A stretch of 64,000 nucleotides of DNA, taken from Diplonema japonicum (taxonomy: Eukaryota > Protista > Euglenozoa: Diplonemea). Each line of letters opens with the position of its first letter. Position 1 is the stretch's first letter. Below the pieces are notes generated by a model. The model saw nothing but the letters and a program-made list of their open reading frames with translations, had not been told where the DNA came from and ran no database searches. The translations under genes were made by a program, and so were the position numbers. Below, piece by piece: positions 1-18,531 of this stretch. The DNA lies in contig OZ025696.1 in the NCBI GenBank assembly GCA_964019335.1, forward strand, positions 1 to 64,000, written 5' to 3'.

Positions 1-72
1 GGGTTTGCGGGTTTGCGGGTTTGCGGGTTTGCGGGTTTGCGGGTTTGCGGGTTTGCGGGTTTGCGGGTTTGC
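1..72 (+). repeat. (GGGTTTGC)9 tandem octamer, running off the window start
   Basis: Nine perfect copies read directly from the sequence. Confidence 0.97.
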
Positions 73-178
73 AAAATAAATAAAAAGGGGGACTTGAGAA
101 AATAAATAAAAAGGGGGACTTGAGAAAATAAATAAAAAGGGGGACTTGAGAAAATAAATAAAAAGGGGGACTTGAGAA
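73..178. repeat. ~27-bp tandem repeat (AAAATAAATAAAAAGGGGGACTTGAGA) x~4
   Basis: Direct reading; the unit recurs at ~513-557 and ~890-933. Confidence 0.9.
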
Positions 179-466
179 TGTTTTTTTTTTTTTTTTTTTT
201 TTTCTTCAAAAGACACACAAGGCACGATAAATCTTAAGAGAAAATAAAAATGAGGGAGAATCAAAAAAGGGGAAAGGGGCAGAGTGACCAATGTCCATGC
301 GAAAAAGCATAGAGCGGGGGAAGAAGAAAATCAAAAACAGGAAAAACACATCACCACAAAAGAAAAAAGAAAAAAGAAAAAAAAAAAAAAAACGTCGACC
401 GAGATGGTTCCACTTCAAAAAGAAAAAGAAAAACAGTAAAAAGGGGTCACCTCCTCCTGCGAGTCG

Positions 467-519
<53 letters not shown>

Positions 520-845
520 GGGACTTGAGAAAATAAATAAAAAGGGGGACTTGAGAATGTTTTTTTTTTTTTTTTTTTTTTCTTCAAAAGACACACAAGG
601 CACGATAAATCTTAAGAGAAAATAAAAATGAGGGAGAATCAAAAAAGGGGAAAGGGGCAGAGTGACCAATGTCCATGCGAAAAAGCATAGAGCGGGGGAA
701 GAAGAAAATCAAAAACAGGAAAAACACATCACCACAAAAGAAAAAAGAAAAAAGAAAAAAAAAAAAAAAAACGTCGACCGAGATGGTTCCACTTCAAAAA
801 GAAAAAGAAAAACAGTAAAAAGGGGTCACCTCCTCCTGCGAGTCG

Positions 846-896
<51 letters not shown>

Positions 897-1005
897 GGGA
901 CTTGAGAAAATAAATAAAAAGGGGGACTTGAGAATGTTTTTTTTTTTTTTTTTTTTTCTTCAAAAGACACACAAGGCACGATAAATCTTAAGAGAAAATA
1001 AAAAT
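151..1005. repeat. ~375-bp tandem duplication (two full copies plus a partial third) containing 44-T and 42-T runs
   Basis: Near-identical blocks (CTTCAAAAGACACACAAGGCACG at ~204, ~582, ~958; CGTCGACCGAGATGGTTCCAC at ~393, ~772). A sub-block recurs at 1200-1362. Confidence 0.9.
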
Positions 1006-1362
1006 ATTCCAAAACAGACAATCAAGTTCCAACCTGGGAGGAAGGCATGGGTTTCTCTTTTTCTTTATGGGAGGGAGAGGGGAAGAAGAAAAATTCAAAA
1101 TTAAAAATCTCAAAAAAGGCTTAAAAGAAGAAGAGGCAAATTCAAAAACATACTAGGGAGGAATGAGTGGGGCAGGGGGTAAAATTTAGGAGGGGGAAAG
1201 AGGGAGAATCAAAAAAGGGGAAAGGGGCAGAGTGGCCAATGTCCATGCGAAAAAGCATAGAGCGGGGGAAGAAGAAAATCAAAAACAGGAAAAACACATC
1301 ACCACAAAAGAAAAAAGAAAAAAAAAAAAAAAAACGTCGACCGAGATGGTTCCACTTCAAAA

Positions 1363-1991
1363 TCTTGGATCCATTTTTTTTTTTTTTTTTTGTTTATAGT
1401 GTGTGTTGGGGGGGAGGGGATCCTTTCGTTGAGCGGCGGGCAGGCCGACGGGCAAAACAACCCCCCCGGACGACGGCGACGACGGAAGACGGACGCAGCG
1501 GCAAACCCAGGCAGAGGCACAGGAGTATTAGAATCGTTGGTTGTGTCGGTCGTGGCTGCGGCAGGGGCGGCTGCAGCGGTCTCGGTTGCGGCAGGGGCGG
1601 CGGCGTTTGGGGCGGCAGGGTCGGCTGCGGCGTTCAGGGCGGCTGGGGCTGCTGCAGCAGTCGTGCGGCTGGGGCGGCCGTGGCTGTAGCAGGGGCGGCT
1701 GTTGCTCCTTGGTTGCGGCGGCCAAAACCGCGGTCTCTACTTGTGATTTTTTTATTTTATTATTTTTTTTTTCTAAAGGGGGGTGGGGGGATCTAGGGGC
1801 TGGGGGTGGGGATTCATACTGCCCAACCAGATAGTCTGGTTGGGTCGGCCCTGGCGTCGTGTGCAGCCTGGCGGCCTGTCGGGGTTCCTTCTCCCTGCGG
1901 TTTGCGCGGTCACCTCCTCTTGTGTTCCGTCTTGGATCCATTTTTTATTTTTTTTATTTTTTTTTAAAGTGTGTGTTGGGGGGAGGGGATC
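1363..1991 (-). repeat. GC-rich unit bounded by ~60-bp direct repeats (1363-1422 and 1930-1991)
   Basis: Both repeats read GATCCCCTCCCCCC-AACACACAC-(A-rich)-ATGGATCCAAGA on the minus strand. Confidence 0.85.
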
Positions 1992-2014
1992 CAATAAAGT
2001 ACAGAAACTGTAGC
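1992..2014 (-). other. Spliced-leader (mini-exon) relic, 3' 23 nt
   Basis: Minus strand reads GCTACAGTTTCTGTACTTTATTG, the 3' part of the euglenozoan SL (Diplonema-type, as I recall it). It is followed by GATCC rather than a GT donor, so it is not an SL RNA gene. Confidence 0.9.
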
Positions 2015-2126
2015 CACTTTCAACCTCCATCAAAAGCGATAGTATTTTGTCGTTCTCGAACTTTCGCCGTGTCACCGCAATGAGACTGCAAACCAGGAGC
2101 ATCATGATGGCAGCCTGAGACTTCAT
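2015..2126 (-). pseudogene. Possible truncated 5' end of a secreted-protein gene (MKSQAAIMMLLVCSLIAV...)
   Basis: ATG at 2126 with a signal-peptide-like hydrophobic stretch and coding-like composition; cut off after ~37 codons at the SL relic. Confidence 0.4.
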
Positions 2127-2408
2127 TCTTAAACTTCTTTTAATCTGAATGGTGGATCTTATTATGAGTTGCAAAAAAACAGGTGAAACAAAGATTATCG
2201 TTTACCGTAGAAAAAAAGAAAACATGGTAAGGTGCCAAGTCAAACGGCGGTGCACGACCACCACAGTCGGCTCTATCAAGTAGTGGGTTCTGTAGTCAAA
2301 CTTTTCGATATGTTGATCCCGTATCATTCGGGGTTCCTATTTTGCTCAAGCGATGACTTAAACTACGCTAGAAGCAACCATGTGCTCCCAACAACAACAG
2401 AAAGATAA

Positions 2409-2870
2409 TCACGTGTTCTTGTGGTAGTACTCAGCCATGCTGTTTCCGACTTGCTGAATTTTATGAGCGATGATCCTGCGCAGGAGGGGGTCAATGAGGC
2501 TTCCAGCACAACCACAAGGTGGTGTATAAGACATGGTGAGAGTCACATCAGTTCGTGTTGGGGTTTGGGCATCGATGCGGTAGGTGAAGAAAGAGTCTTT
2601 GAAAGGAGATGGCTGATCTCCTTTGTGGAGCCTCAGAACAATTTTCGATTTCTCCTCCCATTCTGTCACTGTCTCCTGCAAAGGGTCATTGTCCTTAGCC
2701 CCTTGGAACACCAACCTGCTTGCTCCTACTCCCATCTTCTTCTCACTCACAAATTGAACTTTTGTCACGTTCGGCACGTACTTATCAGCAAGACTCAAAT
2801 CCTGCAGCCGCCCCCACACTTTGTCGACGCTCTGATCAATCACTACCTTCGCTACTGCATTGCTAGGCAT
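2409..2870 (-). CDS. SRPBCC/START (polyketide cyclase-like) domain protein
   Basis: IDQSVDKVWGRLQDLS..YVPNV, GVGASR, ETVTEWE pattern; likely start MPSNAV at 2870. Confidence 0.8.
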   Translation of the reverse strand: MPSNAVAKVVIDQSVDKVWGRLQDLSLADKYVPNVTKVQFVSEKKMGVGASRLVFQGAKDNDPLQETVTEWEEKSKIVLRLHKGDQPSPFKDSFFTYRIDAQTPTRTDVTLTMSYTPPCGCAGSLIDPLLRRIIAHKIQQVGNSMAEYYHKNT

Positions 2871-3853
2871 GGGTATGGGTATGGTATGGGTTGAGGTCTT
2901 AAGTTTTGACAGTTTTTGTTTCCACAGCGGCAGATTTAAATAAAGAATTAAAGAATACAACTTAAAAAAAGCAAGAAAAAGCAAGAGGACAATAAGTTAT
3001 AGGTCTTTAAAAAAAAAGATCGGTAATTTGCACAGTAAAGTGGGAAAACGTTGCCTTTAAGAACACCCCGGACAGAAAATGGTCCGGCTCGACAAGCTCA
3101 GTCGCCGAAAAACTCCGACATTCCGGTTCTTTCATTTACGGTGAAAAGAAATTCAATAGTGTGTAGGACGAGGGGCTTGTGATACTCACTGGATATTAAA
3201 AAAACCGCCTTCTGGACAACTTCCTCTCCCGTAGGCCACTACAATGAAGTAATTCTTATTGAGCCGCGACAGTTGAGGGGTCGAAAAAAAAAAGATCCCG
3301 GATTTAATATTGATATTTACACTGCATCTTCTGCTTGGTCGGTCTCTCAACCATATCGACAGGGTAGTGTAGAAAAGTGCTTAGAAATATAAATAAAAAA
3401 TAAAAAATAAAAAATAAAAAAAAAGGAGAAAAAAAAAGAGAAAGCAAGGCCAGCTGAAGAGTCTCAATCTATTGATCGAACCTTTCTGCTGTGGTGGCCT
3501 TCGGCCCCTTGTTCACCCTCCTCGGTTGAACCTAGGTATAAAACCCTCAAAATAAACTCATATTAACATGCAGACTCCTAAAGCGAAAGCCGCATGCCCT
3601 AAAAGGGAGGGGGTATGGTCAGTACTAGGCATCTCTCAGTTTTGATCTAATCTTGCGAGATCTCTTCAGGCAAGTAGCACCCTTCATTGGCTCCCACTAG
3701 TGTCCCAGCAGGTATGGAGAGTACTTTTCCCGACCACGGTCTCCGCATTTGCTCTGTGGACAAGGTTATTCTGTTAAAAGCGAAGACTCACACTTCTTCT
3801 TTCTTCTTCCCTTTACTGCCTTCTCACACGATGAAATGTGATGTCACGTGCGC

Positions 3854-4987
3854 TTATTCTTCCTCAGCACCATGCCCACGTAGCATGTCTGAGATCTCCT
3901 TGTAGCCCTCACGCACGGCCAGACGCAGGGGGCGGAGCCCACGGGAGTCTTTGATATTAGGATCAGCACCATGACTGAGGAGGAGCTGCACAATGGCAGG
4001 ATGATTGAGACGAACAGCAAGGCAGAGCGCACTGTCCCGGTTGCTGTCCCAAAGGTTGACGTCTGCCTTCAGGTCAAGAAGAACCTGCACTATCTCCACG
4101 CGAGTGTGCGTAGTAGCCGAGTGCAGGAGTGAGTCGCCGTAGCAGTTGAGGAAGTCAGGGTTGTCCACGTGATACAGAAATAATCTTACTATGGCAGTGT
4201 ACCCTTTGCTCACAGCAACGAATAAGGGCGATAGACCTATTCTGTTCCTCACGGTAATGTCAGCATTCTTCTGAAGCATGATCTGCACTACGTCGTGTAA
4301 GCCTTTGTCCACAGCGTCGTGCAGGGGGTACCCCCACATTGGGTCTTTATAGCTCATGTTTGCTCCGAGTTCGATCAACATTTTTGCTATCTCTGGGTGA
4401 CCTTTATTCACTGCCTGGCCGAGTGGCATGTGCTTATGATCATCGTCACTTGTAGTCGTCGACACACGTTCTGCGATTGTCCACTGAAGCGTACCGAGGT
4501 CGCTCTTTAACAAGAACTCTGCACAACCTATAAGCCCGAACTCTACTGCTTTACAAAAGGCTTTCTGCACGCCTTCCATGGATCTGATCGCATCAGCGTC
4601 GCACAACAGCTTCAGTATCTCCATATACTTACAGTCAAGGCTAGCTGGATCTCGTTGGCCACCGCCAAACCTTATAGTCAAGGCTTGCTTGATCTCGGTG
4701 GCCATTACCGCCAAATCGCCATGACTCCAATTAAGCTCCTTCAACTGCATCTCAGCCCTCGGCTTCCTTCCCATCTCCACCGTCACTTCGCTTTGGTCCT
4801 CAAAGGGATACGCGTCCACCCTTGCTTCGTCATCAAGTTCCACGCCGTCAAAGGTTAGCATTAACTGCTCTGTGGCAAGTTTGGAAGCTGCTGCAGCGGC
4901 TGCCTTCACATCTCGAATAGATTCGGAGGCCATAGCATCGACGGCGATGGTCCGCGAGGGGAACTTCACCTGCAAAGTGACTGACAT
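3854..4987 (-). CDS. Ubiquitin-like N-terminal domain + ankyrin repeat protein
   Basis: Ubl-like first ~75 aa (ESIRDVK..LTFDGVELDDE); several GxxPLHxA/IVxLLL ankyrin repeats. Confidence 0.88.
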   Translation of the reverse strand: MSVTLQVKFPSRTIAVDAMASESIRDVKAAAAAASKLATEQLMLTFDGVELDDEARVDAYPFEDQSEVTVEMGRKPRAEMQLKELNWSHGDLAVMATEIKQALTIRFGGGQRDPASLDCKYMEILKLLCDADAIRSMEGVQKAFCKAVEFGLIGCAEFLLKSDLGTLQWTIAERVSTTTSDDDHKHMPLGQAVNKGHPEIAKMLIELGANMSYKDPMWGYPLHDAVDKGLHDVVQIMLQKNADITVRNRIGLSPLFVAVSKGYTAIVRLFLYHVDNPDFLNCYGDSLLHSATTHTRVEIVQVLLDLKADVNLWDSNRDSALCLAVRLNHPAIVQLLLSHGADPNIKDSRGLRPLRLAVREGYKEISDMLRGHGAEEE

Positions 4988-6022: not shown

Positions 6023-8224
6023 TCAAAAACCCCAGCAGCCAAGCTTACTCACATGTTCTCCTGCTGAAGGATTACTGATCATGTGGGTAGAGGAAAGGTT
6101 ACTTCGAGTGCGATAAGCGTTAAGAAATCCAGAAAAGCTACTATCCGAGTTGACTGCGATGTGATGAGAAGCTGTACGGGAGACCTCCCAATCAACGGCA
6201 GCACGAACCTCAAACGGCCAGCCTGACTCCTCTGGATGGGCTTGGCTCTTGTGGATTAAAATAAATGTGCTGTTGAGATCCGCCAAAACAGGGTCATCCA
6301 TGTTTATGTCAGAAGCCAAATACACGTGCGTTGCATCAGGGGCGGCAGCAAGAACTGCCTGTCTGAACACTGCTACTTGATCCTCAGTAATACTGCACTG
6401 CCATCTGCGTAAGTGAATAGACACCCAGTACTTCGGTTTTGGGAGAAGCTTCACTACTTCGTTCACCCTTCTTCTAATCAACCAGTTTGGCCTCAATGCC
6501 GCCATTGCCATGTTGCACCCGTCCTCTCCGAATTCTTGGCACACTTCTAGGCGTCTGCTGTAAACCACTGTGCATAAACTTAGCATCCTAGTCTTGTCCA
6601 GTTCAATTAGCTTAGTATCGGGTGAATCATCTATGTCTGACGGATACGCCTCCATCACTTCCCCTACGCTCATCCCACGCAACCGCTTGAGCGAGTCGGT
6701 CCGCAGTCGTATCTTCAGATCCTCCCTTTCTGTACTCATAAAGTTCGTTACGTTGGACACATTTGCTGCGACGCCCATACCGAAGTCCGGCCTCCTCACA
6801 CACAAGCCGTACCCGTGGACAGTGTCGTAGAAGTGGTCCTTGTCCCATAAGGCCCATATTCCGTAGTTCCTTCCCTTAACCATACCCGAGTGGTAGTCAT
6901 CCGCCATCATGTGCCATTTAGTCATTCCAGCATACGACTGAGGGATCGCAGGCGGTTCCTCTAAGTCGGTGCCCCACAGCAGAGAGAATAGGATTGCGTT
7001 GACTATGTGCTCGCGTTGATTGTTCAGACCGCCTCTGATGTCGGTGGTGGAGCGGAAGACGACGCTGCTGCTGTTGCATGCAATGTCCGTGTCTAATATC
7101 TGCTTCGACGGGCGCACAACACGCTTCGGAACGTCCAGAAGGTTGGACACACGACATTGCTTCAAAAGCCTCTCCGGGAAAAGCCTCGCTGCATCCAAAT
7201 ATCGCTCCGTTTCCAGCGTGAAGCTGTCAGCCAGAAGCTTCGTTGGAGGATACACTAAGCCCATTATCTCAGCAGACCGCTTGCTCTGGCAGGAACCCCT
7301 CACTATTTGTGCCATGTACCATGACCGAGAAAACAGCGCTGGCAGGTGGCTCCACCCTGTTTGTAGGTAGTCAGGGCACTCAATGTCACTCGAAGATTCA
7401 TTCTGCGGCATAAAGGAAACATGGATAGGGTGCGTCAGCTGGGCCTCTATGCTGCTGAAGATCTGTGCGAACGTTGCATTTGGGAGGGGTGGTGTGTTTA
7501 AGGACGACACAAACACAAGTGGCATTCCAGTTAAAGACACAGCGTGGTGCTTCTCTCCTTGCGGGGACATGCCAGACGAGTTCGTGATCTTCACAAGGCC
7601 TTTGATATCGTTCTCAAAGAGCAGCTTTCGGACATCTTCGCTCTCCACTTCAAAACTCAGTACGACGTCGAAGAGCCAACGGTGCTTCAGCACACTCAGC
7701 CATTTCGCCAAGGCAGCAATGTTGCTACTGTTGCTTGTGCTTTCGCCTGACAGTCCCCGTGCCAGCACCAGAGAAAACCATGGGTGTCCTGCTGCGGAGA
7801 GACGATGTTTCCTCGCATTTTGGAATGCATGGAGGCAGATGTCTTCCCACGATGTTGGGCAGTTGCGAACTTTGAGCACCTTTAATCGACGTTTCCTCAA
7901 GACACGCGGACTGCGCTGCAAACCCAGAACAGGAAGATTGGGTGTCCGCAATTTGTGGGGGGGCAAAGGGATAAGAGCTGCACGCAGCAGATTTGGAATC
8001 TTCTTTGGAGATAGTTTTGGCTTCAACATTTGTGGTGCCTTCTGGAGGGCTCTTGGAGGAGGCAGTAGCGGCGGCGACGGAGACGGCGATGGTGTGGTAT
8101 CATTATGGAGTAAAGCGGCAACAGGCACATACTCTGTTTCATAATTCCTAAAAACCAGTAGCAACATGCTTGCTAGGCACGAACTCAACAGCACATTCCT
8201 AATTAACACCAAAGGGGGTGACAT
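6023..8224 (-). CDS. Type II membrane O-fucosyltransferase-like glycosyltransferase
   Basis: N-terminal TM and Pro-rich stem; GGLNNQRE, SIHLR, VYLASD and AAVDWEV..SSFS motifs of the O-FucT family; likely start at 8224. Confidence 0.75.
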   Translation of the reverse strand: MSPPLVLIRNVLLSSCLASMLLLVFRNYETEYVPVAALLHNDTTPSPSPSPPLLPPPRALQKAPQMLKPKLSPKKIPNLLRAALIPLPPHKLRTPNLPVLGLQRSPRVLRKRRLKVLKVRNCPTSWEDICLHAFQNARKHRLSAAGHPWFSLVLARGLSGESTSNSSNIAALAKWLSVLKHRWLFDVVLSFEVESEDVRKLLFENDIKGLVKITNSSGMSPQGEKHHAVSLTGMPLVFVSSLNTPPLPNATFAQIFSSIEAQLTHPIHVSFMPQNESSSDIECPDYLQTGWSHLPALFSRSWYMAQIVRGSCQSKRSAEIMGLVYPPTKLLADSFTLETERYLDAARLFPERLLKQCRVSNLLDVPKRVVRPSKQILDTDIACNSSSVVFRSTTDIRGGLNNQREHIVNAILFSLLWGTDLEEPPAIPQSYAGMTKWHMMADDYHSGMVKGRNYGIWALWDKDHFYDTVHGYGLCVRRPDFGMGVAANVSNVTNFMSTEREDLKIRLRTDSLKRLRGMSVGEVMEAYPSDIDDSPDTKLIELDKTRMLSLCTVVYSRRLEVCQEFGEDGCNMAMAALRPNWLIRRRVNEVVKLLPKPKYWVSIHLRRWQCSITEDQVAVFRQAVLAAAPDATHVYLASDINMDDPVLADLNSTFILIHKSQAHPEESGWPFEVRAAVDWEVSRTASHHIAVNSDSSFSGFLNAYRTRSNLSSTHMISNPSAGEHVSKLGCWGF

Positions 8225-8518: not shown

Positions 8519-9970
8519 CTAATTCACTAACGGCCGCTCTTCATCAACGTCTGTTTCTGAGTCGGTTTCACGGTCGGTTTTCTCGGCATTAATACACTCC
8601 GAGCGTTTCTTAGCCGCTATGACGAGCTTATCCCAGTCACTATACCATATTACAACCCAAGAGACGGTAGCACACACAGCATAACCGCACACACACACGA
8701 AGAGCATGCCGTTCAGCTTATAGCCTAACTTGTACACAGCCAGAGCTGAAAAAGGGATGTTCAAGAACCACGCAGAGGACCCGATGATCGCTGCCCCCAA
8801 GCCAGGCCGTCCTTGCCCGTCCATCACAAAAAGCGCTACGACTCCCGTGTTGAGCAGCGGGATGGCCAGAGCAAGCAGCCAACACATATCCCTCACGGTG
8901 CGTACTATGTCATCGTCACTGGTGAAGATGCGCCCCACGTAATCACGAAACAAGAATATACTCAAACCGCACACGCTTGAGATAGCGGATATCATGGTCG
9001 TCCCGTACTTGATTGCCTTGAAGTTCAAATCGAGATTCCCGGACCCAATGTGCTGTGCCACCCGAATATTAATGGCCTTGCAAAACCCCATAGATGCGCC
9101 TGCCAGCTGCATCCACAATGCGCCTGATGCAGACCACGCGGCGATGTCGGTGGTCCCCATGTGTGCTGTAAATATCGTCAAGAGCTGGAACTGCCCTTCT
9201 TCCACCAAAGCTCCTATGGCTGTTGGTATGCACAGCATAAGGTACTCCTTCATGCGCGACCATTTCACAGCAGCAGACCATGACAGACCGTCCCAGTAGT
9301 CAGCATGGTACTTCTTGTAATACATGAAACCCAAGAACATGGCAAGCTGGCCTATCATGGCCACAGCCGAACCTACCGCGGCACCGACGTACCCCATGCC
9401 ACCCCACGAAGTGCCCGGTATGCCATTGATGAACAAAACGTTAAAGCCCAAGGAGAGGAGAAGCGCAAGACCTGATGAGATCATAGCAGGCTTCGTAATC
9501 CCCAAAGCGCCGTAGTATTGTTCCATAGCATACTCCATACCAATCAGGTAGTACAGGGGAATAGAGTACCGTGCGTACCGCTGGCCGTCCTTTGACAGAT
9601 CATGGTCCATGCCCATTCCTTTTAGCACTGTGTCTGTGAGGAACCACCATGAAATGAAGACAGGCACAATAACCGCTGTGTACACAATAAAGCCTGCCTG
9701 AAGCCAAATACCGGCAAGTTTCTTATTCCCGGCTCCAATGGCCTGCGAACACACCGTGTTTAATGTGTTAAGTGTGCTGAGAGCCAATGTCTGCGTTAGT
9801 GACATGAATGCTTGCCCCAAGCTGACAGATGCCATGGCGTCCTTTCCGCATATCAGCCCAATGCACGCCACGTTGATGAGCGCAGACGACCCAACGAACA
9901 TGTCACTCAGTGCCATCGGCCATGCCAGACTCCAAAGAGTCTTCCACTCGTCATCTCGCCACCATTTCAT
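8519..9970 (-). CDS. MATE family transporter
   Basis: LWSLAWP, NTVCSQAIGAGN, IRVAQHIGSGN and DGQGRP motifs with ~12 TM helices; likely start at 9970. Confidence 0.93.
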   Translation of the reverse strand: MKWWRDDEWKTLWSLAWPMALSDMFVGSSALINVACIGLICGKDAMASVSLGQAFMSLTQTLALSTLNTLNTVCSQAIGAGNKKLAGIWLQAGFIVYTAVIVPVFISWWFLTDTVLKGMGMDHDLSKDGQRYARYSIPLYYLIGMEYAMEQYYGALGITKPAMISSGLALLLSLGFNVLFINGIPGTSWGGMGYVGAAVGSAVAMIGQLAMFLGFMYYKKYHADYWDGLSWSAAVKWSRMKEYLMLCIPTAIGALVEEGQFQLLTIFTAHMGTTDIAAWSASGALWMQLAGASMGFCKAINIRVAQHIGSGNLDLNFKAIKYGTTMISAISSVCGLSIFLFRDYVGRIFTSDDDIVRTVRDMCWLLALAIPLLNTGVVALFVMDGQGRPGLGAAIIGSSAWFLNIPFSALAVYKLGYKLNGMLFVCVCGYAVCATVSWVVIWYSDWDKLVIAAKKRSECINAEKTDRETDSETDVDEERPLVN

Positions 9971-14620: not shown

Positions 14621-15033
14621 TAATAAAAAATTTGATAAATTTCGGTGTGCGGGTGGGTGCTCACCGTTCAGGGAGAAATTCACACTAATCGGTCACCGTT
14701 CTGCGGAAAAAAAGAACAACGCAAGAAAGGAAGATGGGTGAAGCGTGCCGGAATTGCGCACCTCTAAGGAAGGAGGGAAAAAAAAGAACAGGAGGCTTAG
14801 GAGAATCTTGGAAGGAAAATCATGCAAGAAAAAAGCAAAACAAGAACAGGAATAACTATTCTTTGCTTGAGCATGACGGAGAAGAATTTGCGATACGCCC
14901 CACATGGGTAGAAAGCCACCCGGCGTATAAAGGGTTGAAGAAAAAAGAGAAATACAACCCTATAATCTAGATATCTCAAAAAAGAAAAGAGTCATTCAAC
15001 AAACTATAGAAAGATCTGTTAAAAAATAAACGT

Positions 15034-16797
15034 TTATGCTTCCCACCAAAGGAACGGCTCACCAAAAGGCCATCGAGGGATACCTTTAGGCTTTCGCTCA
15101 GGGGAGCGACGGTTCCAGCCCGGGTGGATGGATTGAATGAAATTTGTCTGAGAGGTGGTAGAGTCGATGGCAGCTATCTTATATCCAGAAATCTTGTTTT
15201 TGTAGATCTCATTGCATGAGCAGCCTGCGCGGATGTAGATGCCTCTCTCGTGCTGCCCGATGAGCTCATTGTAGGCAACTATGTTAAACTTCGATCCAGT
15301 GAAGTCCAGATCCTGTGCTCCGATATCGTCAGAAGGGTCCGAGAGCAGCATGACACCAGGGAAGGCGATGTGCTTGCTCAAACTTCGATCGTTCCCGTTC
15401 ACGACGTTGGCCAGCACTACGTTGTAGAAGCTTGTCCTCACCATCTTTATCCCACCCCCGTGGTTGCTCGCCACCATGTTCCCGCTCAGAATGTTGTACA
15501 CCCCATTGTCAATCGACACACCGGGAAGCTTGAAGATCGTCAGCCCGTCCGACCCCGTCCTGTTGTCCGGTACCTCCTGCTTCAGAACATGTGGTGCCTG
15601 ATTGCCTCTTCGACCGCAGTTGTGTATGAAATTACCATGCAGCACGTTAGATGCACTTCCCCCGTCAATGCAGAGCCCTTCCTTTTCCGAGGAGTCTATC
15701 TCGTTCCCAATCAATGCGTTTCCCACACACCCGTCCAAGTAGACACCCTGAGCACGGCTTCTCAATATCTTGTTTCTCAAGAGAACGTTGCCATGTGGGT
15801 ACCGCCGCCGTTTTAAAAGGGAGTAGTCTGGGTCGTGGTGAAGGTGCCGCGACAGGAGGAAGGACACACCTGTCAAGATGTCGATGTCGCGGTAGGTAAG
15901 CACGATCCCCGCATGCCAGTTCGCGATGCCTGTCCCGCCCACCACACGATTCTCCTGCAGCAAGGACCCTGAAACATTCCCATGCACAATAATTCCCCCG
16001 GCTCCTGAGTCCCTCACCACATTGTTGACAATCCATAGCCCTGACGAGTCAGATAGCGTCATGCCTGCTTGTTGAGAGTTCACCAGTGTCGATCCCTTTA
16101 TCGTTACATTGTGCGACCTGTGCACTAAAAGGTGTCCTGCCTTGAAGTCGCCGTCTTTTTGGTAGAAACCGACTGGTGGCGTTGCTTTGTAAACCAGCCG
16201 CATGTTCAGCAGTACTATATTCACGGAATTCTCGACGTGAAGCATGTACCGCTGTGTGGTCACTATGTCCATCACAACCTCCGCTCTACGGAAGTCTACC
16301 ACAAGGTTCTTTGTGTTGTTGATCAGCAGCGGTGTGTTTCCCTTGATACCATCAAGGGACATTATTGTCACTTTTCTACCTGATTCTATATACTCTTGTA
16401 GGTCTGAGAAACTGTTTACATTCGCGGACACTAACGTAGTGGGCTCCATCTCCAGCCGTCTCTTGAATTCCAGCTGCATATCATTCGCCTGTCCAAAGGT
16501 CACCGCCCCCGTCTCGAGCGTCGCTCCTATGTCAGCAGCACTCCGATACACCTGCGTCGGCTGCACCAGCTTTATAATCTCTTCTGCACACTTTTCCTCT
16601 GGGTGTGTCAGATTCCTGATTGGCGGAAGACGGTAGTTCGAGAGGAGAACCTGCAACCCAGTATAAGAAGTACGACTTCGATACAGGACCTTCTGTGTGC
16701 CCTTGAAGGCAGTTGTTCCGAGATACACATAATTCACCACCAATACTGCCGAAAGTACCAACAGGATGACGGCATACTGCTTGCGCACTTGCAGCAT
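15034..16797 (-). CDS. Membrane-anchored right-handed beta-helix (pectin lyase-like) protein, paralogue A
   Basis: N-terminal TM; repeated GI.L....N.I..N.I motifs; likely start MLQVRK at 16797. Confidence 0.85.
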   Translation of the reverse strand: MLQVRKQYAVILLVLSAVLVVNYVYLGTTAFKGTQKVLYRSRTSYTGLQVLLSNYRLPPIRNLTHPEEKCAEEIIKLVQPTQVYRSAADIGATLETGAVTFGQANDMQLEFKRRLEMEPTTLVSANVNSFSDLQEYIESGRKVTIMSLDGIKGNTPLLINNTKNLVVDFRRAEVVMDIVTTQRYMLHVENSVNIVLLNMRLVYKATPPVGFYQKDGDFKAGHLLVHRSHNVTIKGSTLVNSQQAGMTLSDSSGLWIVNNVVRDSGAGGIIVHGNVSGSLLQENRVVGGTGIANWHAGIVLTYRDIDILTGVSFLLSRHLHHDPDYSLLKRRRYPHGNVLLRNKILRSRAQGVYLDGCVGNALIGNEIDSSEKEGLCIDGGSASNVLHGNFIHNCGRRGNQAPHVLKQEVPDNRTGSDGLTIFKLPGVSIDNGVYNILSGNMVASNHGGGIKMVRTSFYNVVLANVVNGNDRSLSKHIAFPGVMLLSDPSDDIGAQDLDFTGSKFNIVAYNELIGQHERGIYIRAGCSCNEIYKNKISGYKIAAIDSTTSQTNFIQSIHPGWNRRSPERKPKGIPRWPFGEPFLWWEA

Positions 16798-16887: not shown

Positions 16888-18531
16888 TTACCACTGCAAC
16901 ACCATAGGAGCCATTTTCAGCATATCTACCATGTCGCGTCCTTCTTCTGTGAGACCTTTAGTAGAGTACTGCTTGCCTCGCAAGGCGGCCATCCCTACCT
17001 CATTATAACGAGCCCACTTCTGCCCGCATCCCATCTCGAGCTGGTACATCCACTCCGCATCCATGACAGCCACTTCCTGCACCAACATCACTTCATACAG
17101 GAAAGATGCCTCATCCTCATGCCCCTCCCTGATGAACAACACGTTATGAGGGATGAGCCGCAAGGCCTTCATTTGTTCCACGTCCTTGTACACTACCATA
17201 TCTGCCACGATGGGGTACTCTTCCTTGCGTCCAAGCCTCTCGATCACAGCCAGCCGCAGGGGTAGCTTCCCCACAATGCTGAACCGTCGCATCTCTTCGC
17301 ATCCGAGATCGCCGCACGTCACTGTTCCTGAGCCAACAGCAGCATTGACATCAATGCAAGTGCTGTCGATGTTTGCATTAATGACACGAGCACACAAGGA
17401 CAAGGCTGAGTCAACTGCGGCACAAGTATGCCTGATACAGGGACGTGCTGCGTTGAAGCTCATTTGGATGCGATCGCCAGAAAGGTCGTTGATGATACCT
17501 TTGAAAGAAGTGACGATGGTAAGCGCCTCAGAGACTAACCAAGAGTTCGAGTTCGCAAACCTCTCAACATCGAGCAAGGTGTCCTTCACATTCAAGAGGA
17601 GCATCGAGATACGTGCTTCTCTGATATCTTGATGGATCAGAGTAGCAAGGCAGCAGTCGAAGGTGTTAGACTGATATTCAGCAATCATGGCGTCATTGCT
17701 TTCTTCGTAATGCCGGCTGAAACACGACTGTGGAAGATACGGGCGATAAGCGTTAAGATTGGTGACGAGCATCGTGAAGGCTTTGCAGAGCTCAGGAGGT
17801 ACCTCAGCTCTGTCGAGGTGGTGCATGGCCGCTTCGAGGTTGTAGTCAGCCAGGGACTGCGCGACAAGCTCGGCAACGTTGATCGTTGTCTCCAGCTCTA
17901 CATTGAACTGCTGCATGTGGTCGGCGAAGTATTTGGTTAGTAAGAGGTCTACTACGAACACAGTTATCTGCATCAATGCACCACCCAAAAGACCACTAAA
18001 GCCGGTCTTGCATGGCGGTTTAGCACATGTATTCACAACGCGATCCTCACGGGGAGGGGAACCAGGGAGATCATAGAGACCAATTCGGTAGGCGTGCTCG
18101 AATGCTGTGGTGAAAAGCCACAAGATGCATATAGTGGTAACAAGGACTATGATGCGCTTCCTTGCTCTGAAGAGCAGCAAGCTGTCGATAAGCAGAACGA
18201 ACAACGGCCACGAACGGTTTGCACCTATGATCGCACGATGCAGATCGGCTATTATAATAGCAAAGCTAAACAAAACCCAGCTGACCTCCATGATGCTGTG
18301 AGGGTATGTCCTCTTCACTATCATATACACAATTCCGAAGAATGCCGTTGAAACCGCCAAGCCGGTGCCCACCTTCCCGTACGCAGAAGTGAAAGACAAT
18401 GTCGTCACACCAGAGGCAACGCACACGATGCAAAAACTTATAAATAGCATTTTCTTCCTCACCCGTTCGTCTCCCGTGTCATTGACATGCATGAGCATCT
18501 CGAAACATGGTGCACACAGATTGTTGAACAT
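16888..18531 (-). CDS. Multi-TM class III nucleotide cyclase-like protein (degenerate)
   Basis: About 6 TM helices, YDLPG..C..PPC loop, NLNAYRPYLPQS linker, SGDRI, GDLG, EWMYQL. Confidence 0.8.
   Translation of the reverse strand: MFNNLCAPCFEMLMHVNDTGDERVRKKMLFISFCIVCVASGVTTLSFTSAYGKVGTGLAVSTAFFGIVYMIVKRTYPHSIMEVSWVLFSFAIIIADLHRAIIGANRSWPLFVLLIDSLLLFRARKRIIVLVTTICILWLFTTAFEHAYRIGLYDLPGSPPREDRVVNTCAKPPCKTGFSGLLGGALMQITVFVVDLLLTKYFADHMQQFNVELETTINVAELVAQSLADYNLEAAMHHLDRAEVPPELCKAFTMLVTNLNAYRPYLPQSCFSRHYEESNDAMIAEYQSNTFDCCLATLIHQDIREARISMLLLNVKDTLLDVERFANSNSWLVSEALTIVTSFKGIINDLSGDRIQMSFNAARPCIRHTCAAVDSALSLCARVINANIDSTCIDVNAAVGSGTVTCGDLGCEEMRRFSIVGKLPLRLAVIERLGRKEEYPIVADMVVYKDVEQMKALRLIPHNVLFIREGHEDEASFLYEVMLVQEVAVMDAEWMYQLEMGCGQKWARYNEVGMAALRGKQYSTKGLTEEGRDMVDMLKMAPMVLQW

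What the first reader, a model, noticed from the sequence alone, without database searches (positions are those of the whole stretch)
1363..2014. Genomic spliced-leader relic joined exactly at the acceptor site shown by the unit's own downstream repeat
Seen: the minus strand reads GCTACAGTTTCTGTACTTTATTG|GATCCCCTCCCCCC-AACACACAC-(A-rich)-ATGGATCCAAGA (2014 down to 1930). About 570 nt further on, the same ~60-nt segment recurs as ...CTCAACGAAAG|GATCCCCTCCCC...ATGGATCCAAGA (AG at 1424-1423). One copy therefore carries the SL and the other carries an AG at the identical nucleotide. Known: euglenozoan mRNAs receive the SL at AG acceptors, and SL joined to non-SL-gene sequence in DNA implies reverse transcription. 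Inference: this is a terminally redundant retroposon-like unit whose RNA 5' end is set by trans-splicing and which carries a fresh acceptor in its 3' repeat. Such a unit could regenerate a processable copy without its own promoter inside polycistronic transcription.
Basis: partly seen in the sequence, partly recalled or inferred. Interest (0 to 1): 0.92.

Follow-up and report, generated by a model that had tools for sequence, protein, structure and literature searches.

The report
Spliced-leader-headed retrotransposon relics at chromosome end
The flagged stretch holds two broken front ends of a large mobile element that sits at chromosome ends of a diplonemid protist; every DNA copy starts with the host's spliced leader, and one fragment shows that a spliced form of the element's RNA was copied back into DNA.

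Summary
A 23-nt spliced-leader (SL) 3' part at 2014-1992(-) is fused to GATCCCC. The same ~60-nt segment recurs at 1422-1363(-), preceded by AG at 1424-1423.

The "terminally redundant unit" reading is not supported. The second 60-mer belongs to a separate neighbouring copy with its own SL remnant (1542-1528).

Both copies are truncated 5' ends of a family with more than 60 copies at chromosome ends. The genome is very probably Diplonema japonicum.

- Leader-bearing copies run: SL, then a 102-123-nt GT...AG leader, then the 60-mer, whose ATG opens the ORF.
- In full copies the frame is 2826-3005 aa with AlkB-like and OTU domains, and the tandem period is 10,659 bp. I did not test for RT.
- Thirty-eight leader-bearing copies keep AG exactly where the window copy carries the SL.
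- The leaderless form arose at least twice and heads an intact 2826-aa frame on C31.
- Seven loci carry a full SL followed by a relic SL that starts after the SL's internal AG.

So spliced, SL-headed element RNA is reverse-transcribed, as in dinoflagellate SL-tagged retrocopies. I found no description of this in Euglenozoa. The scan noted this system on many other windows of the genome. The window copies themselves are dead relics.

The parts
2015..2174 (-). Flank: fragment of a subtelomeric gene family (ORF starts MKSQAAIMML...), cut off at the junction with the SL
   Evidence: Paralogs at C69:479550-479894 (95-96%) and C85:420050-420408 (81-87%) align up to window 2015/2014 and stop there. 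SL-headed copies align only from 2014 onward.
1992..2014 (-). Unit 1: 5'-truncated spliced leader, SL nt 17-39
   Evidence: Exact match to the 3' 23 nt of the genome's 39-nt SL. The three other SL|GATCCCC copies carry the SL from about nt 2-4, missing at most its first three bases.
1942..1991 (-). Unit 1: short (spliced) 5'UTR, GATCCCC... plus an A-rich tract, joined to the SL at the acceptor
1543..1941 (-). Unit 1: start codon (1941-1939) and N-terminal ORF fragment of the AlkB/OTU element. About 78 codons are in frame, then at least 2 frameshifts; it ends before the AlkB domain
   Evidence: Alignment to canonical ORFs and to the D. japonicum transcript ORF P0001. No Pfam hit on this fragment, whereas canonical copies hit PF13532 at about aa 166-340 depending on the copy.
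1528..1542 (-). Unit 2: remnant of its own spliced leader, SL nt 1-15
   Evidence: 15/15 match. Global alignment to a canonical copy shows about 41 nt deleted (SL nt 16-39 plus the start of the leader). The homologous tandem at C53 (L042) has a complete SL here.
1423..1527 (-). Unit 2: GT...AG-type leader (5' part deleted), A-poor and pyrimidine/G-rich, ending in the only AG (1424-1423)
1363..1422 (-). Unit 2: 60-mer, that is the end of the 5'UTR plus ATG (1374-1372) and 3 further codons
848..1362 (-). Unit 2: 3' module (GAAGTGGAACC..., T-run, A21, 26-nt units x2) ending in A42. With the parts above it forms an internally deleted mini-copy
   Evidence: The module recurs before A-run, 8-mer repeat and SL junctions at other chromosome ends, and follows the ORF repeats in L037.
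73..847 (-). Two further 378-bp units (ORF codons 4-12 fused to the same 3' module and A-runs), ending in 26-nt repeats x4
   Evidence: TRF finds period 378 x2.3 at 98% and period 26 x4.1 at 100%; motif map.
1..72 (+). Terminal 8-mer array (GGGTTTGC)9, the chromosome-end repeat of this genome
   Evidence: The same array lies at many contig ends. No TTAGGG arrays were found in the assembly.

Best explanation
Window 2014-1363(-) holds two adjacent, dead 5'-end fragments of a chromosome-end retrotransposon-like family of a diplonemid, very probably Diplonema japonicum. Leader-bearing DNA copies begin with the host's 39-nt SL. A 102-123-nt leader follows that starts with GT and ends with the only or last AG. 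Then comes a short 5'UTR and an ATG that opens a giant ORF: an AlkB-like dioxygenase domain, then an OTU protease domain, in a frame of up to 3005 aa with a tandem period of 10,659 bp. Unit 1 (2014-1543) descends from a spliced isoform of the element RNA in which the leader was removed. This happened either by trans-splicing of a fresh SL onto AG|GATCCCC or by cis-splicing from the element-encoded SL/GT donor. The RNA was reverse-transcribed, and the copy now carries only SL nt 17-39 joined inside a subtelomeric gene. It later lost everything past about codon 130. Unit 2 (1542 to about 848) is an unspliced-leader, internally deleted mini-copy whose SL has decayed. Shown: the anatomy, the family, the acceptor coincidence, recurrence of the spliced form, relic SLs, and the AlkB+OTU giant frame. 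Inferred: the RNA steps, the RT responsible, and how the copy was attached at this end.
For: 1. The SL is the 5' boundary of the family. 33 of 34 leader-bearing copies start with the SL, their upstream flanks are unrelated, and the SL starts at nt 1, 2 or 3 in 21, 50 and 19 copies.
2. The leader has one AG, its last two bases, and 38 copies keep AAAG|GATCCCC. The SL is fused at that nucleotide in 4 copies and one base off in 2 more.
3. Leaderless copies do not form one clade. Well-supported branches force at least 2 origins, and the nearest relative of unit 1 is a leader-bearing copy (L032, 96%).
4. The C31 leaderless copy heads one open frame of 2826 aa holding AlkB (8806-9207) and OTU (6562-6882). 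The C24 copies show SL, AlkB and OTU in frames of up to 3005 aa, repeated every 10,659 bp. PF13532 is confirmed on four copies.
5. A full SL followed by SL nt 24-39, which starts right after the internal CAG, occurs at 7 loci in at least 3 families.
6. The same SL-at-an-AG relation holds in unrelated repeats: L003 AG|GTGGTGGGG versus the SL-fused L002/L006/L094, and L070 ...CCAG|GTAGAGCGG versus the SL-fused L058.
7. SL 'stutters' look like template switching: SL plus 6, 16 or 46 nt followed by a new SL.
8. The family is transcribed in D. japonicum. A Trinity transcript ORF, P0001, is 95% identical to the ORF start.
9. Unit 2 aligns to a canonical SL+leader+60-mer with one internal deletion.
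Against: - I could not show an RT domain in this family. The RVT_1 scan scored only 150 of 625 candidates, none in C24 or C31. RT rests on an earlier follow-up note (s1-864444).
- I have no RNA read evidence for the SL|GATCCCC isoform. X11, which is only guessed to be RNA, shows depth on 1888-2109 and none on 1111-1887, which is suggestive at most.
- Some SL junctions in the family do not follow an AG in longer copies: L068, L009, L040, L060.
- Unit 1 is 3'-truncated, which plain target-primed reverse transcription does not produce.
- The window copy itself could have been acquired as DNA from another chromosome end.
- No SL-less master copy of the leader was found, so how the SL|GT-leader head itself arises is open.
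Confidence: 0.75

Rival explanations
1. DNA-level acquisition of this particular copy. A break inside the subtelomeric gene at 2015 was repaired by break-induced replication or end joining into a pre-existing SL|GATCCCC-type element on another chromosome end. On this view the 23-nt SL marks only the recombination breakpoint. The SL|GATCCCC junction would still be RNA-derived originally.
For: The flank paralogs stop exactly at the junction. Chromosome ends are mosaics, with the 8-mer repeat starting at many different points inside units. Unit 1 is also 3'-truncated. Close relatives exist at other ends: L032 at 96%, L049/L056 at 94-95%.
Against: The other leaderless copies each begin within SL nt 2-4 and have unrelated flanks, as cDNA ends would. 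5' truncation is also what incomplete reverse transcription gives. No donor copy with an identical junction and downstream sequence was identified.
Confidence: 0.2
2. One reading: a terminally redundant (LTR-like) retroposon whose 3' repeat carries a fresh acceptor so that it regenerates itself.
For: Two 60-mers flank about 570 nt in this window, one with the SL and one with AG.
Against: The second 60-mer has its own SL remnant and leader. The repeats are 90% alike, and the sequence following them places the two copies far apart in the family tree. Leader-bearing copies have one 60-mer only. The tandem layout is seen at one other locus, with a complete SL in between.
Confidence: 0.03
3. The leader was lost by a genomic deletion between short direct repeats (TTG|G ... 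AAG|G), not by RNA splicing.
For: One or two bases of microhomology exist at both ends. Other small deletions occur in leaders: L042, L073, L087.
Against: The end points coincide exactly with GT and the only AG of the leader. The loss recurs in at least 2 subfamilies. The same SL-at-AG pattern occurs in unrelated repeats, and relic SLs start after the internal AG.
Confidence: 0.05
4. Assembly artefact or cDNA contamination.
For: No bridging read-derived contig was displayed.
Against: Four identical junctions lie in different chromosome-end contexts. There are 227 SL copies with coherent family structure. Contigs of runs from three studies hold the region. The assembly is a HiFi plus Hi-C chromosome-scale assembly.
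Confidence: 0.02

Closest known systems
Dinoflagellate SL-tagged retrogenes / mRNA recycling (DinoSL relics; PMC6050394, PMC5585692, PMC12014239)
   Same: The SL is DNA-encoded at the 5' end of non-SL-gene sequence. The junction lies at a splice acceptor. Relic SLs truncated at the SL's internal AG sit behind a newer full SL, which implies repeated rounds of trans-splicing and reverse transcription.
   Different: This is a euglenozoan with a 39-nt SL. The carriers are mainly retroelements stacked at chromosome ends rather than thousands of cellular genes. Relics are rare: 7 loci.
SLACS / CZAR / CRE1-2, the SL-RNA-gene-specific non-LTR retrotransposons of trypanosomatids (from my own knowledge; SLACS-type RTs are mentioned for D. 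papillatum in PMC10161547)
   Same: Euglenozoan retroelements physically linked to SL sequence. Earlier scan notes, which I did not test, place the AlkB/OTU element in the CRE clade.
   Different: Those elements insert into SL RNA genes within the SL exon, so the SL pieces are target flanks. Here the whole SL is the element's own 5' terminus, upstream flanks are unrelated, and copies sit at chromosome ends, not in SL arrays.
Telomere-associated non-LTR retrotransposons (Drosophila HeT-A/TART/TAHRE, Bombyx SART1/TRAS1; from my own knowledge)
   Same: Uniformly oriented stacks of full-length and truncated copies at chromosome ends, interleaved with terminal repeats.
   Different: The sense strand runs 5'->3' towards the chromosome end, the opposite of HeT-A. 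The elements have SL heads and AlkB and OTU domains. The terminal 8-mer has unusual polarity.
U6/L1-type chimeric retrocopies made by RT template switching (from my own knowledge; related work 10.1101/2025.02.02.635956)
   Same: Other LINE families here are headed by the SL plus 14 to 46 nt of SL-RNA-intron-like sequence of varying length, and SL 'stutters' occur.
   Different: The window's SL|GATCCCC junction has no intron bases and lies at an AG, so it points to splicing rather than template switching.

Membership tests
SL-tagged retrocopy (dinoflagellate-type recycling of spliced RNA) | Host SL encoded in DNA directly upstream of non-SL-gene sequence | tested here: met
   2014-1992 is fused to GATCCCC. 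There are 4 identical junctions and 227 SL copies genome-wide.
SL-tagged retrocopy (dinoflagellate-type recycling of spliced RNA) | The junction coincides with an AG acceptor in unspliced relatives | tested here: met
   38 copies read AAAG|GATCCCC, and this is the only AG of the leader. Some other junction variants in the family do not follow an AG.
SL-tagged retrocopy (dinoflagellate-type recycling of spliced RNA) | Relic SL cut at the SL's internal AG, behind a newer SL | tested here: met
   Seven loci in the genome, three of them inspected. Not present in the window copy itself.
SL-tagged retrocopy (dinoflagellate-type recycling of spliced RNA) | Poly(A) tail and target-site duplication of the retrocopy | tested here: inconclusive
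   A-runs of 21-44 nt end the short modules. Unit 1 is 3'-truncated, so no tail or duplication can be read.
Non-LTR (LINE-like) retrotransposon | Encodes a reverse transcriptase | not tested
   My loci reach at most 630 codons. The RVT_1 scan scored 150 of 625 candidates, none in C24 or C31. RT is asserted only by the earlier follow-up s1-864444.
Non-LTR (LINE-like) retrotransposon | Many copies with unrelated flanks, a common 5' boundary and 5'-truncated members | tested here: met
   The window copy is truncated to SL nt 17-39.
Non-LTR (LINE-like) retrotransposon | Long ORF or polyprotein spanning most of the unit | tested here: met
   AlkB and OTU matches share open frames of 2826-3005 aa within a 10,659-bp tandem period.
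   Leader-bearing copies have a single 60-mer. The window's second 60-mer belongs to a neighbouring copy with its own SL remnant.
SLACS/CRE-type SL-gene-specific element | Insertion inside SL RNA genes, with SL fragments as target flanks | tested here: not met
   The complete SL is the element's 5' end, flanks are unrelated, and the location is chromosome ends.

The most novel reading that the evidence does not exclude
The AlkB/OTU elements have no promoter of their own. Read-through transcripts running towards the chromosome end would be given a capped 5' end by SL trans-splicing at the acceptor in each copy's leader. Such SL-capped RNAs would be reverse-transcribed and stacked at the ends. 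Together with the unusual (GCAAACCC)n repeat they would form a retroelement-based system that builds or maintains diplonemid chromosome ends.
Probability: 0.3. Interest if true: 0.85.

Novelty: new variant of a known kind. Interest (0 to 1): 0.6.

Why it matters
SL-tagged retrocopies are the classic proof of RNA recycling in dinoflagellates, and I found no report of them in Euglenozoa. This locus and its relatives show that in a diplonemid the spliced, SL-headed RNA of a large chromosome-end element returns to DNA repeatedly.

That gives a natural sequence tag for dating and counting retrotransposition events. It also offers a way to ask how a mobile element exploits trans-splicing in a genome with polycistronic transcription, and an entry point to how the unusual chromosome ends of this organism are built. 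The published genome note for D. japonicum mentions neither telomeres, SL nor transposons.

Tried and rejected
- Rfam scan of seven SL loci: only chance-level hits and no SL RNA family.
- Pfam on ORFs behind other SL heads (L023, L004, L007, L027): nothing.
- Read laying: Logan contigs are too fragmented in the repeats to display a bridging piece.
- RVT_1 scan of the genome: the list is saturated by other LINEs, so it is uninformative for this family.
- Search of 1.84 billion representative proteins with 630 aa of the ORF: only generic small AlkB proteins and one D. japonicum transcript ORF, and no giant relative.
- Searching the 8-mer repeat in papers: only primer noise.
I used a referenced DNA query instead.
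- I considered the SL+GT leader being a variant SL RNA gene and dropped it. It lacks the anti-SL hairpin seen in the other families.
- I considered a single origin for the leaderless form, and the tree rejected it.

Full report
**Observation.** On the minus strand the window reads the 3' 23 nt of a spliced leader at 2014-1992, followed at once by GATCCCCTCCCC at 1991-1980. An A-rich tract and ATGGATCCAAGA (1941-1930) follow. The same segment recurs at 1422-1363, preceded by CGAAAG with AG at 1424-1423. The two copies agree in 57 of 63 aligned columns. The SL core occurs once in the window and never in shuffles.

**Organism and SL.**
- The window is the left end of contig C49 of a 62.5-Mb, 132-contig assembly.
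- The full SL, read from some 100 copies, is a 39-mer that differs at two positions from the diplonemid-type SL listed in PMC3795323.
- A transcript ORF of Diplonema japonicum in EukProt (P0001) is 95% identical to the start of the family's ORF.
- The published D. japonicum YPF1604 assembly is 62.30 Mb with 118 pseudomolecules, from HiFi plus Hi-C.
- I take the genome to be that species or a very close relative.

**What the 60-mer belongs to.**
- A search of the genome with 2100-1363 gave 91 matches, almost all within about 10 kb of contig ends and all pointing towards the end.
- Leader-bearing copies read: SL, a leader of 123 nt (subfamily 1) or about 102 nt (subfamily 2), one 60-mer, then the body.
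- The ATG at the end of the 60-mer opens an ORF of 300 to more than 620 aa in my loci, with a PF13532 (AlkB-like 2OG-Fe(II) oxygenase) domain at about aa 166-340 depending on the copy.
- Genome-wide, the AlkB matches behind SL heads lie in open frames of up to 3005 aa, and the same frames hold an OTU match about 2 kb further on.
- On C24 the order is SL at 17837, AlkB at 16922-17314, OTU at 14900-15160. The SL recurs every 10,659 bp, and two of these units keep the 3005-aa frame.
- The 60-mer is therefore the end of the 5'UTR plus the start codon of a roughly 10.7-kb element.
- An earlier follow-up of this scan (s1-864444) states that the giant protein continues into a reverse transcriptase. 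I could not test that.

**The acceptor.**
- The 123-nt leader starts with GT, has 5 A in all, and contains a single AG, which is its last two bases.
- Thirty-eight distinct leader-bearing copies read AAAG|GATCCCC.
- Thirty-three of 34 leader-bearing copies start with the SL.
- The SL is fused exactly at that AG in four copies: C31, C49 and both ends of C57. It is fused one base off in two more, L049 and L056.
- In a tree of the 330 nt downstream, the leaderless copies are scattered among leader-bearing ones. Well-supported branches force at least two origins.
- The nearest relative of the window copy is a leader-bearing copy, L032, at 96%.
- The C31 leaderless copy heads an intact 2826-aa frame with AlkB and OTU.
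- Removal of a GT...AG segment, repeatedly and in copies that can be full-length, is the signature of splicing followed by reverse transcription.
- The sequence cannot say whether a new SL was trans-spliced onto the AG or the element-encoded SL/GT acted as a cis donor.

**Wider support for RNA-mediated copying.**
- SL heads have unrelated upstream flanks and begin at SL nt 1, 2 or 3 in 21, 50 and 19 copies, as cDNAs ending near a modified cap would.
- Seven loci carry a full SL followed by SL nt 24-39, which starts right after the SL's internal CAG. This is the dinoflagellate-type relic left by a second round of trans-splicing and retro-copying.
- In unrelated repeats the SL is again fused where SL-less paralogs have a pyrimidine tract plus AG: L003 versus L002/L006/L094, and L070 versus L058.
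- Short SL 'stutters' look like template switching.
- Not every junction fits. L068, L009, L040 and L060 have SL fusions not preceded by AG in longer copies.

**Why the LTR-like reading fails.**
- Window 1542-1528 is SL nt 1-15.
- A global alignment shows 1542-1363 to be a canonical SL+leader+60-mer with one internal deletion of about 41 nt.
- The downstream 60-mer is thus the 5'UTR of a second unit.
- That unit continues after four codons into a 3' module ending in A42 (to 848), which makes it an internally deleted mini-copy.
- Two more 378-bp units and a 26-nt repeat follow, down to the terminal 8-mer array at 72-1.
- Unit 1 keeps about 78 codons in frame, then shifts frame at least twice, and stops before the AlkB domain.
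- Only C53 (L042) shows the same body-then-SL-then-leader tandem, at 80% identity and with a complete SL.

**The proximal junction.** The flank 2015-2400 has paralogs on C69 and C85 whose alignments stop at 2015/2014, while SL-headed copies align only from 2014 on. The SL relic therefore marks a true breakpoint inside a subtelomeric gene-family member. Two routes could have produced it: a 5'-truncated cDNA attached there, or a broken end that copied a pre-existing element from another chromosome. I cannot tell which and give the second about 0.2.

**Reads.** Contigs of runs from three studies hold the region. Laid on 1000-4300 they are fragmented in the repeats, and none was displayed bridging the junction, though none contradicts it. 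One contig of a divergent sample matches 2144-2014 and then runs on unlike. This is expected from a paralog. A run guessed to be RNA has depth on 1888-2109 and none on 1111-1887, which is suggestive only.

**Literature.** SL-tagged retrogenes are well described in dinoflagellates (PMC6050394, PMC5585692, PMC12014239). I found nothing comparable for Euglenozoa. The D. papillatum genome paper, the D. japonicum genome note and the diplonemid intron paper do not mention genomic SL copies, telomeres or these elements. The library is incomplete, so this is absence of evidence only.

**Tools and limits.**
- The scan has many first-reader notes on this same system on other pieces of the genome. They served as leads and not as evidence.

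**Verdict.** The RNA-splicing-then-reverse-transcription inference is supported. The terminal redundancy and self-regeneration model is rejected. The locus itself is a pair of dead relics, and its value is as clean evidence for the life cycle of a family that appears undescribed.

Noticed in passing
window 1-72; the same at contig ends in L012, L024, L050, L051, L054, L056: Chromosome ends carry an 8-mer array that reads GGGTTTGC inward at left ends and GCAAACCC outward at right ends, so the strand running 5'->3' to the end is the C-rich one, the reverse of canonical telomeres. No TTAGGG arrays were found in the assembly. The array starts at many different points inside elements, even inside an SL, as de novo addition would.
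   Followed up: partly
L035, L039, L040, L046, L086, L103: Short interstitial tracts of the 8-mer (16-38 nt) lie between an A-run and the first bases of a full SL, often sharing AACC at the junction. This suggests SL-headed units are added onto repeat-capped ends.
   Followed up: partly
L016, L023, L027, L069, L070, L076-L078, L082, L083, L092, L096, L097; 43 genome-wide hits: Dispersed LINE-like families start with the SL plus 14-46 nt that look like an SL RNA intron: GT..., then CAATAAAGT complementary to the SL's ACTTTATTG, then a conserved CGGTTTGAAAAG. They are usually preceded by a run of 10-25 T. L016 is an internally deleted copy whose 3' end also ends in a T-run.
   Followed up: partly
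L084/L089, L085, L093, L007: Several apparently ordinary protein-coding genes have a DNA-encoded SL at the start of their 5'UTR, preceded by a T-run. They are candidate SL-tagged retrogenes.
   Followed up: no
window 1508-1501 (-): The subfamily-1 leader contains one exact G-strand unit of the terminal repeat (GGGTTTGC) in the sense orientation. It is absent from subfamily 2, so it may be chance.
   Followed up: no
window 2015-2174 (-); paralogs at C69:479550-479894 and C85:420050-420408, and a related motif at many ends including C24 every 10,659 bp: The gene fragment abutting the SL belongs to a subtelomeric family with a signal-peptide-like start. A related 19-mer recurs once per 10.7-kb unit on C24, so it may itself be part of element-associated sequence.
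   Followed up: partly
window 3442-3774: This stretch is covered at 40-100 times single-copy depth in all DNA runs, with several alternative joints, so it is a dispersed repeat in the intergenic region.
   Followed up: no
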